From positions 2,946 to 66,945 of the forward strand of contig JAAOMT010000375.1 in assembly GCA_016748015.1 (NCBI GenBank): 64,000 nt of DNA. The letters are read 5' to 3'. Made by a program: the position numbers and the translations under genes. Position 1 is the first letter of the stretch. Every line of letters starts with the position of its first letter. Below are positions 33,451 to 35,808 of this stretch, one piece after another. Below the pieces are notes generated by a model. That model did not search any database, was not told the DNA's origin, and was given only the letters and a program-made list of their open reading frames with translations. This DNA comes from Geosiphon pyriformis uo1. Taxonomy: Eukaryota > Fungi > Glomeromycota.

Positions 33451-35697
33451 CTAATCGACATACTCAGTAAAATGCGTATGACCTATTGGCAAAACCCAAA
33501 AATGTAAAAAGCTTAAGAATTGAATTTAAGTGAAAACAGCGAAGTATTAGTTTTAAAGATACATACCAGTTTGTAAAGCATGCTGCGTTGCTTCTTTTTC
33601 ACCTATACAATGAATGTTAAAAATAATCGGTAAATTTTGATATTTTCATAACATAAGCTCCAATATATCAAAAAAAGTATCACATAGATCCTGAGAGTCC
33701 TAGAAAACTGAACCCTGGAAAACAACTAAAAGGTCGTTCCTTGTAGCTGACCTTTGATTCCAGTATTACATTCCCCACATCGAAGAGTAAAGTATGCAGT
33801 GTATGTATACTTGTGTAGCTAATGGACCAATCCAGTCAACAAAAAAATTTTGTCAATAGAACTGAATAAGTTCTCACTTTAAGGATATAAAATGATTCAA
33901 ACACCCAGGACTTATTGACACACATCGAATATTCACGAACCTCCTTCATTTTATTCGCAATAGTCAAAGCTATTTTGATCACGTAATCGTCAGAGATTTT
34001 AAAAATCGTTTGATCGTATTCTGGGACGGCATCAAGTGTAGGTGTCAAGGCTAGCGCGTCGTAGTCTAGAAATTAATATTTAAGTAGAACTTGTGAATCA
34101 GGAAATTAATCGAAAAACTATACAATGTTGAAATTTTACTTACGAATCCCGCTATTGTTGGAATACAGATGAATGAGTATTATATCAATAAATATGGTGC
34201 ATTATGAATATGGAAAATAGAGATAGACTACTTAAATAATTGAATCTCTAATGAAATCACATGAATATAAATATCACAAGTCTGAAAATACCTATAAATC
34301 AAGTAAACGCATTGATCATAGCGGCCTTGACCTAGAAAGGCCAAATTAAACCATAATTCAAATATCAAAATACAAATCTTGTGCCTTTTTTTTTCCGAAA
34401 ATCAACGCAATAAATGGTATCACAGGGTACACTACCATATCGATCAATACGTCCACTTCCAACATCAACACTACGAATTTCCGTTTTATAATGAGCCGAA
34501 AAAATTGATAATTCAATTGCTCCTCCCCAACTATTCGGCTTCCCAATCCAAGTGCAATACTCGTCTCGTGATCGTTCAAGTATCACGTCCGAGTATGTCT
34601 CAGGATCTTTACGAACGTGGTCAATTATAACTTTAAAGGGTATTAAAAGAAATTTAGAAACAAAGATAAAAATAGAGTAAAGGCAAAGAAACTGGCTAAT
34701 GATTACTTTCTCGTAGCCGTTGAGCTGTATCAATTGATCTCTCTAACACGTATCTTGCCAGCAAGGATAGTACGAATCATTATGGGTTATTTACGACTTG
34801 AATTAGTGGAAAATCAGTTATATAGGGAAGTACATGATTACCCTATAAAATGAACAATTAATTTGTGTGCCAGTTATAATCCAAAAGATCTAATCGGTCA
34901 AAAGCTTTTCTTACCAATTGCACGAAACAGGCATGAATTATCATCCGGCATTTCCTTTGTATGTGAAGAAATTAATGTTTTGAATACTGAGTAAAATGTT
35001 TGTATTTTCGAACCTGAAAAATATAGAATTGCACAAACCATACTTCTAATTAAACAAAATTCCCAAATTCTTTATATCCCATAAATCCTACCCTAAGAAT
35101 AATATGACCGTAATCAGTATCCACTGAAATACTAGATTCTTTTTGCTGTTTCCTTCGCCTAGCTTCAATCTCCAATACTTTGTCCCAAGGAATCTCATGC
35201 ACGATTATTGTTTCACCGTTTCGGATTCCAGCTGCATGTAATGTCTCGGTTTCTTTCGATGAGATTTTACGTGGTGGGTAGCCCATTTTTACTTTTAATA
35301 GATCGAAGGATGAAAATTTGAAGTCAATTGATAAAAGGAACACTATTAAGTCGATCGAATTATGCTTGATAGAGAACCGATTCCAAGGAGGAACCATCAC
35401 AAAAGAAACATCATCAGAAATTCGGATTATGGTTTCATACTATATAGATAATCCATTTTCTGAACAATATGGCAAATTTCTAGTAAAACTATATTGACAT
35501 CACGCCAGAAAAAACTATTGAATCCCAAGGAGTTACAAAATAATTTCTGTTATATGCTCACGTTCTTGCCGTCTAGCCTCAATACCAGTATACTTTTGTA
35601 TACTCGACTCCAATGTTGAGACCTTATCTTCTGGGGAACTGACAATTTCATAAACTTTGCCATTGTTCGCCTGACGAATTTTAAGTTTTAATGACAT
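33451..35697 (-). CDS. OTU1: Ubiquitin thioesterase OTU1/YOD1 (UBX-like, OTU, C2H2), 308 aa, 12 exons: 35562-35697, 35092-35291, 34915-34954, 34842, 34707-34753, 34436-34630, 34292-34331, 34144-34151, 33941-34065, 33752-33818, 33567-33602, 33451-33482
   Basis: GYPP, catalytic PDDNSCLFRAI, SWGGAIEL, YSGIHYDAL and FTLRCGEC..GEKEATQHALQTGH. All introns are GT-AG and the 927-nt CDS is in frame. Confidence 0.93.
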
Positions 35698-35808
35698 ATT
35701 TTATGGCTTTCAAATTTGACGATCCGATTTATTATCAAAAAAATTGTTACTTTCAGATTAAGAAAATAAATGTCTGAATATTATAGTGTTTATTAAATTT
35801 TTTAATAT

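What the first reader, a model, noticed from the sequence alone, without database searches (positions are those of the whole stretch)
34754..34914. Probable single-nucleotide exon in OTU1, next to the catalytic cysteine
Seen on the minus strand: GCA ATT G|gtaag..72 nt..ttttatag|G|gtaatc..88 nt..ggcaag|A TAC GTG TTA GAG. Two normal-sized GT-AG introns flank one G at 34842, so a Gly codon (G+G+A) is built from three exons and gives SCLFRAIGYVLERS, which fits the OTU1 helix after the catalytic Cys. Splicing it as one intron to the same acceptor gives GAT ACG TGT TAG (frameshift and stop). The only in-frame single-intron option (TTAG at about 34743) deletes GYVL. The internal donor GTAATC is identical to the next intron's donor. 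One-nucleotide exons are very rare. Skipping this one would give a truncated product, so it could act as a splicing-controlled switch (inference).
Basis: partly seen in the sequence, partly recalled or inferred. Interest (0 to 1): 0.85.

Follow-up and report, generated by a model that had tools for sequence, protein, structure and literature searches.

The report
Conserved one-nucleotide exon in OTU1
A deubiquitinase gene (OTU1) of an arbuscular-mycorrhizal-type fungus really does contain an exon one G long, used in the mRNA and kept unchanged in every Glomeromycotina lineage examined and in the one Mucor genome examined, which explains why public gene models of this gene are nearly all wrong at that spot.

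Summary
On the minus strand, exon 3 ends ...GCAATTG at 34915. A 72-nt GT..AG intron follows, then one G at 34842, then an 88-nt GT..AG intron, and exon 5 starts ATACGTG at 34753.

Spliced transcript contigs from two studies remove a net 160 nt, not 161. The mRNA therefore reads GCAATTG-G-ATACGTG, and the frame stays open (RAI-G-YVLERS). The seven other introns are canonical GT..AG.

The same YAG|G|GTA core occurs in all 11 intron-bearing orthologous loci examined: nine other Glomeromycotina genera, Mucor hiemalis and the window. It occurs once per interval, except twice in Mucor. Intron interiors are no more alike than shuffled sequence.

A single non-canonical intron would need variable, unheard-of splice dinucleotides. 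Assembly error is excluded by ten independent assemblies with the same structure.

Linnemannia, Basidiobolus and about 75 metagenomic OTU1/YOD1 loci have no intron there.

One-nucleotide exons are already known (Arabidopsis APC11, Fusarium CYP621A, 13 in Coprinopsis). This is a new member of a known kind, notable for its depth of conservation.

The parts
34915..34954 (-). Exon 3 (40 nt): EMPDDNSCLFRAI plus the first G of the split Gly codon. It holds the catalytic Cys motif DDNSCLF.
   Evidence: Transcript contig pieces cover 34914..34953 (aligner placement); boundaries.
34843..34914 (-). Intron A, 72 nt, GTAAGA...TTCATTTTATAG.
   Evidence: Absent from the transcript contigs. An equivalent intron of 59-107 nt is present in 10 orthologous loci.
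34842..34842 (-). Exon 4: a single G, the middle base of Gly codon G-G-A.
   Evidence: Net removal of 160 rather than 161 nt in the mRNA. It is the only AG-G-GT in the interval. It is invariant in 11 of 11 loci.
34754..34841 (-). Intron B, 88 nt, GTAATC...GCTGGCAAG.
   Evidence: The equivalent intron is 68-98 nt in the orthologues.
34707..34753 (-). Exon 5 (47 nt): third base A of the Gly codon, then YVLERSIDTAQRLRE.
34436..34630 (-). Exon 6 (195 nt): core of the OTU domain.
   Evidence: phmmer against PDB: human YOD1/OTU1 4bos, E 1.5e-14; yeast Otu1 3by4, E 7e-8.
34144..34151 (-). Exon 8: 8-nt microexon CGGGATTC (part of S-G-I-H of the GIHYD motif).
   Evidence: Eight letters lie between the two sides of joint 34065/34292 in both transcript contigs. 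Position. Conserved in 11 of 13 loci.
33750..35697 (-). OTU1 gene as far as examined: 10 exons, from the ATG at 35697. The transcript continues beyond 33750 into a further exon outside the stretch that was laid.

Best explanation
The G at 34842 is a constitutive single-nucleotide exon of the OTU1/YOD1 deubiquitinase gene. Two ordinary short spliceosomal introns (72 and 88 nt, both GT..AG) flank it. The sequence YAG|G|GTA superimposes a 3' splice site and a 5' splice site, and the one G serves as the consensus exonic base of both. The two sites are too close to be occupied at once, so the introns are most likely removed one after the other, as at a recursive-splicing ratchet point, except that one base is retained. 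Either order leaves a usable site: ...TTGG|GTAATC after intron A goes, or ...TTATAG|GATAC after intron B goes. The retained G completes the codon G+G+A (Gly), six residues after the catalytic Cys, and keeps the frame. Without it a stop follows at once. The arrangement was already present in the common ancestor of Glomeromycotina and probably earlier, since Mucor shares it. SHOWN: the mRNA sequence, the genomic signals and the conservation. INFERRED: two separate splicing reactions and their sequential order.
For: (1): spliced contigs from two runs of two studies (X2, X3) match all exons with no mismatch. They skip 160 nt between 34753 and 34914. The aligner can only label this joint TA..AG or GT..AA, whereas the six other joints are GT..AG (one of them spans the 8-nt microexon, so seven other introns). 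(2): only the G at 34842 is flanked by AG and GT, and the frame is open through 10 exons only with it. (3): the same G|GT(GC in Ambispora)...YAG|G|GTA...AG|N layout is found in Rhizophagus, Glomus, Funneliformis, Entrophospora, Gigaspora, Acaulospora, Diversispora, Ambispora, Paraglomus and Mucor. The third codon base varies (T, C or A), always giving Gly. Per-locus chance of the motif is 0.004-0.064. (4): intron interiors of the window against every other locus are at shuffled-sequence identity (|z| <= 2), yet TAG/CAG-G-GTA is invariant. (5): a Logan transcript-type ORF (P0163) whose exons match Gigaspora margarita DNA at 95-100% reads RAIGYVLERS. (6): an orthologue with IGY aligns without a gap through this helix to solved yeast Otu1 and human YOD1. 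(7): the locus is single-copy in the 128-Mb assembly, so there is no retrocopy that could be the source of the contigs.
Against: The mRNA sequence alone cannot say which of three genomic Gs (34914, 34842, 34754) it contains. No partially spliced intermediate was seen, because only assembled contigs and no raw reads were available. All species carry G at the internal position, so there is no natural substitution test. The only DNA run covering the site is probably the assembly's own source.
Confidence: 0.9

Rival explanations
1. One 160-nt intron with non-canonical ends (GT..AA, or TA..AG) is removed in a single step. On this reading the internal AGGGT is incidental or acts as an intronic enhancer.
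For: This is how the aligner reports the joint (ends CT..TA on the + strand, with one letter fitting both sides). The mRNA is identical under this model.
Against: Across the 11 loci the required dinucleotides would be TA/TG/TT/CA at the 5' end, or AA/CA/TA at the 3' end. These are variable and are not known splice-site classes. The two-intron model gives GT or GC..AG twice in every species. AG-G-GTA is invariant in introns that are otherwise randomised. The seven other introns of the gene are canonical.
Confidence: 0.05
2. Assembly or sequencing error: a G is missing at an exon edge, and the gene really has one ordinary intron.
For: The only DNA contig laid on the site (X1) is probably the source of the assembly, so it is not independent.
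Against: Ten independently assembled genomes of other species show the same one-base deficit and the same internal AG|G|GT. The transcript contigs match the assembly exons with no mismatch.
Confidence: 0.01
3. The 1-nt exon is a regulated on/off switch: skipping it yields a frameshifted transcript with an immediate stop and so lowers OTU1 output. This is not exclusive of the best explanation.
For: Skipping would give GAT ACG TGT TAG. Such a fragile arrangement could in principle be exploited.
Against: Both transcript contigs carry the included form. Splice signals are strong and conserved. No skipped form was seen in any source. Contigs drop rare variants, so low-level skipping cannot be excluded.
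Confidence: 0.08

Closest known systems
Fusarium CYP621A single-nucleotide exon (Nelson & Syed 2026, PMC12940212)
   Same: It has the identical core AG|G|GT. The G is the middle base of a Gly codon in a conserved motif. It is conserved among orthologues, supported by RNA reads, and missed by gene predictors.
   Different: The gene is a P450 rather than a deubiquitinase, and the phylum is Ascomycota. Conservation there is within one genus (about 20 Fusarium species), whereas here it spans four orders of Glomeromycotina plus Mucor.
Arabidopsis thaliana APC11 single-nucleotide exon A333 (Guo & Liu 2015, PMC4674806)
   Same: A constitutive 1-nt exon flanked by AG and GT and required for the frame. 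That paper proved the case by substituting the base and reading the cDNA, which is the test proposed here.
   Different: The base there is A, the upstream intron is long (333 nt), and rice APC11 lacks introns. Nothing comparable to the subphylum-wide conservation seen here was read in that paper.
Coprinopsis cinerea long-read annotation (PMC12230235)
   Same: It reports 13 exons of 1 nt among 1,165 genes with microexons, so fungi splice such exons routinely.
   Different: It is a genome-wide catalogue without conservation analysis, in Basidiomycota.
Recursive splicing at ratchet points (Drosophila Ubx and vertebrate RS-exons; from my own knowledge, not checked here)
   Same: A 3' splice site is juxtaposed with a 5' splice site, and removal is stepwise with a regenerated 5' site.
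   Different: Ratchet points are AG|GT and retain nothing. They serve very long introns. Here one base is retained and both introns are short.

Membership tests
Single-nucleotide exon | The mRNA contains one base that is not contiguous with either flanking exon in the genome. | tested here: met
   160 of 161 nt are removed. The junction reads GCAATTG-G-ATACGTG in contigs of two studies.
Single-nucleotide exon | That base is preceded by AG and followed by GT, with two introns of workable size. | tested here: met
   TTATAG|G|GTAATC is unique in the interval. The introns are 72 and 88 nt; the gene's other introns are 76-270 nt.
Single-nucleotide exon | Omitting it breaks the reading frame of a conserved protein. 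| tested here: met
   a stop follows immediately without it, and the frame is open through 10 exons with it; no indel is tolerated here relative to solved Otu1/YOD1.
Single-nucleotide exon | The core is conserved in orthologues while the introns diverge. | tested here: met
   11 of 11 loci, with intron interiors at shuffle-level identity.
Single-nucleotide exon | Substituting the base changes the mRNA (the APC11-type proof), or half-spliced intermediates exist. | not testable with these tools
   Only assembled contigs were available. A minigene or raw reads are needed.
OTU1/YOD1 deubiquitinase | OTU domain similar to solved Otu1/YOD1. | tested here: met
   exon 6 against 4bos, E 1.5e-14, and 3by4, E 7e-8.
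OTU1/YOD1 deubiquitinase | Catalytic Cys motif (D-x-N-S-C-L-F) and His motif (G-I-H-Y-D). | tested here: met
   DDNSCLF is in exon 3, and S-G-I-H-Y-D is built from exons 7, 8 and 9.
OTU1/YOD1 deubiquitinase | N-terminal UBX-like domain and C-terminal C2H2 zinc finger. | tested here: inconclusive
   Orthologues carry PF21403 and PF24560. My Pfam call on the window's own N-terminal exons failed on a coordinate slip and was not repeated. The zinc-finger exon is only partly inside the stretch examined.
Recursive-splicing ratchet point | Zero-length junction AG|GT with nothing retained. | tested here: not met
   One G is retained. It works like a ratchet point but is not a member.
Stwintron (spliceosomal twin intron) | An internal intron interrupts the donor, acceptor or branch site of an outer intron. 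| tested here: not met
   intron A ends one base upstream of intron B's GT, so both sets of signals are intact in the primary transcript.

The most novel reading that the evidence does not exclude
This may be the most deeply conserved single-nucleotide exon known. On this reading it was present before Glomeromycotina and Mucoromycotina diverged, was lost with both introns in Mortierellomycotina, and has been kept constitutive for several hundred million years by stepwise, ratchet-like splicing. It would be a natural model for how a spliceosome handles a 3' and a 5' splice site sharing one exonic base.
Probability: 0.45. Interest if true: 0.7.

Novelty: new member of a known kind. Interest (0 to 1): 0.6.

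Why it matters
There are three reasons.

1. It adds a well-supported single-nucleotide exon. I found no report of one outside plants and Dikarya, or of this one, in the searchable literature. It also shows that such an exon can persist across a whole fungal subphylum, which argues that it is stable and accurately spliced rather than a short-lived accident.

2. It explains a systematic annotation error. Public OTU1 models from at least twelve Glomeromycotina species, and apparently several Mucorales, read this junction in many incompatible ways: read-through, skipped exon, invented residues, or the gene split in two. Some thereby lose the OTU Pfam hit.

3. The invariant YAG|G|GTA core offers a simple pattern for finding further cases, and a tractable substrate for asking how two splice sites one base apart are used in order.

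Tried and rejected
Pfam scan of three exons failed because one reference had a stop codon. I did not repeat it, since the PDB search settled the family.

I searched exon 6 by reference and then used stored orthologue proteins. The only joined step was a frame check with carried-over bases inside a script.

I first took P0154 (RAIGVYVLDRS) for transcript evidence of an alternative isoform. One search showed it is a UniParc gene model, so I withdrew that.

The metagenome scan was meant to add Mucoromycota loci. It returned none, only about 75 loci of other eukaryotes, all without an intron at this site. That is useful as a negative distribution but does not test the Mucoromycotina question.

Run X4 gave no contig on the stretch. 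The search of earlier findings gave nothing relevant.

My first script for exon phases mishandled the 1-nt exon and was corrected.

Full report
**Observation**

On the minus strand the window reads ...TGC CTG TTT CGT GCA ATT G | GTAAGA...(72 nt)...TTATAG | G | GTAATC...(88 nt)...GGCAAG | A TAC GTG TTA GAG.
- exon end at 34915
- intron A at 34914..34843
- the single G at 34842
- intron B at 34841..34754
- the next exon from 34753

- A direct join gives GAT ACG TGT TAG.
- The TTAG acceptor at 34746..34743 gives an in-frame form lacking GYVL.
- The next intron's donor (34706) is also GTAATC.

AG-G-G[TC] occurs once in the 161-nt interval. In shuffles it arises in a workable position in 1.5% of trials.

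**What the gene is**

The 195-nt exon at 34630..34436 matches solved human YOD1/OTU1 (4bos, E 1.5e-14) and yeast Otu1 (3by4).

I searched this exon by reference and then worked with stored orthologue proteins. The top relatives are OTU1 proteins of Glomeromycotina, and the nearest is Ambispora at 78% over that exon.

The genome is 128.3 Mb in 792 contigs, and the locus is single-copy. From memory only, that size together with the Archaeosporales affinity would fit Geosiphon pyriformis. This is a lead, not a test.

**Transcripts**

The look-up of sequencing runs gave one probable source DNA run and three others. Laid on 33700..35800, runs X2 (study P2) and X3 (study P1) each gave a spliced contig of 1.06-1.1 kb that matches every exon without a mismatch.

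Seven joints were reported. Six are GT..AG. One of those six (34065/34292) carries eight extra letters, which are an 8-nt microexon at 34151..34144, so seven other introns are canonical.

The seventh joint runs from 34753 to 34914 and skips 160 nt. It is labelled TA..AG, with one letter that fits either side. The refuting junction was not seen.

With the G included, the frame is open through all ten exons examined.

**Which G?**

The mRNA alone cannot tell three possibilities apart: the G at 34842 (two canonical introns), the G at 34914 (a TA..AG intron), or the G at 34754 (a GT..AA intron). Comparative data decide this.

I fetched the OTU1 locus from 12 other genomes. These ten all share one layout:
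- Rhizophagus irregularis
- Glomus cerebriforme
- Funneliformis geosporum
- Entrophospora sp.
- Gigaspora margarita
- Acaulospora morrowiae
- Diversispora eburnea
- Ambispora gerdemannii
- Paraglomus brasilianum
- Mucor hiemalis

The shared layout is ATT G | GT (GC in Ambispora) ... YAG | G | GTA ... AG | N TAT/AAT. Intron A is 59-107 nt and intron B is 68-98 nt. The third codon base is T, C or A, always giving Gly.

The AGGGT is unique in each interval except in Mucor, which has two. The per-locus chance is 0.004-0.064.

Intron interiors of the window compared with each other locus are no more similar than shuffled sequence (|z| <= 2). Even so, [T/C]AG-G-GTA is invariant in 11 of 11.

Under a single-intron reading the splice dinucleotides would be TA, TG, TT or CA at the 5' end, or AA, CA or TA at the 3' end. 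Those are neither conserved nor known classes. Under the two-intron reading every site is GT/GC..AG. The same comparison rules out an assembly error, because ten independent assemblies show the same one-base deficit.

**Other transcript-type evidence**

P0163 is an ORF called on a 1.4-kb Logan contig. Its pieces match separate Gigaspora margarita exons at 95-100% identity, and it reads RAIGYVLERS. Some models of R. irregularis and R. diaphanus also read RAIGYVLDRS, but how they were built is unknown to me.

An orthologue with IGY aligns without a gap through this helix to yeast Otu1 (..CLFHAIAYGIF) and human YOD1 (..CLFTSVYYVVE). Length, rather than the Gly itself, is therefore what is constrained.

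**Distribution**

Linnemannia (Mortierellomycotina) and Basidiobolus are continuous through this site. So are about 75 OTU1/YOD1 loci of other eukaryotes recovered from metagenomes.

The pair of introns is thus specific to Glomeromycotina plus at least Mucor. For Mucoromycotina I have one DNA locus. There is also indirect evidence: Mucor flavus, Circinella, Syncephalastrum and Rhizomucor models are anomalous at exactly this site.

**Annotation consequence**

Public models read this junction in many ways:
- read-through of intron sequence (G. cerebriforme, Gigaspora, Entrophospora, Scutellospora)
- skipping of exon 5 (R. irregularis P0153, F. caledonium, Acaulospora morrowiae P0159, P. occultum)
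- shifted sites that add or change residues (Ambispora GNY, Paraglomus DSY, R. irregularis GVVRILEDD)
- a downstream acceptor (Diversispora, F. geosporum)
- the gene split in two (R. irregularis)

Several of these models lose the OTU Pfam hit.

**Mechanism**

YAG|G|GTA overlays a 3' splice site and a 5' splice site that share one exonic G. It is established knowledge that spliceosomal components cannot assemble on both sides of so short an exon at once. I therefore infer stepwise removal, as at a recursive-splicing ratchet point but with one base retained.

Either order leaves a usable site: TTGG|GTAATC after intron A is removed, or TTATAG|GATAC after intron B is removed. The mRNA, the signals and the conservation are shown. 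The two separate reactions and their order are inferred.

**Comparison with known cases**

Single-nucleotide exons are documented in three places:
- Arabidopsis APC11, with substitution proof
- Fusarium CYP621A, with the same AGGGT core and also the middle base of a Gly codon
- the Coprinopsis cinerea long-read annotation, which lists 13

I found no report for OTU1 or for Glomeromycotina. This is a new member of a known kind, distinguished by conservation across a subphylum.

It is neither a ratchet point (something is retained) nor a stwintron (no splice signal is interrupted).

**The switch idea**

No skipped or alternative form appears in either transcript contig, and the signals look constitutive. 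Contigs cannot exclude rare isoforms, so the idea is unsupported rather than refuted.

**Verdict**

This is a real, constitutive and anciently conserved 1-nt exon. My confidence is 0.9 and I score interest at 0.6.

Noticed in passing
window 34144-34151 (minus strand): An 8-nt microexon, CGGGATTC, supplies part of S-G-I-H of the catalytic His motif. It is confirmed by both transcript contigs. A homologous NGGNATHC flanked by AG and GT is present in 11 of 13 loci, including Mucor and Linnemannia. Many public models (Acaulospora, Ambispora, R. clarus, Scutellospora, Entrophospora) are broken there too.
   Followed up: partly
L001:3634-3650 and L003:2089-2105: In Rhizophagus irregularis and Glomus cerebriforme the first donor is GGTGTGTATAT. 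A second GT five bases in (GGTGT|GTATAT), joined to the distal acceptor, would bypass the single G in frame and add one Val. One UniParc gene model (P0154) does exactly that. Whether any real mRNA does is unknown.
   Followed up: partly
L011 (Mucor hiemalis), about 1560-1590: Mucor has two AGGGT motifs 15 nt apart in the interval. Either would give the same mRNA. The deposited model instead uses a 13-nt microexon that adds YEGA.
   Followed up: no
window 34631-34706 and L012 (Basidiobolus), about 1555-1610: The phase-1 intron right after ...LRE is at the same position in the window and in Basidiobolus, so that intron is older than the pair around the single G.
   Followed up: no
L001, L003, L004 upstream of OTU1: In Rhizophagus an Apc13 and a Nuf2 gene lie next to OTU1; Glomus shows Apc13 and Funneliformis shows Nuf2. 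I did not check whether the window keeps that neighbourhood.
   Followed up: no
It is unrelated to this finding.
   Followed up: no
window 33750 and below: Both transcript contigs run on for about 216-241 nt beyond 33750 into sequence not in the laid stretch. At least one more intron and exon (the rest of the C2H2 zinc finger) therefore lie below 33700.
   Followed up: no
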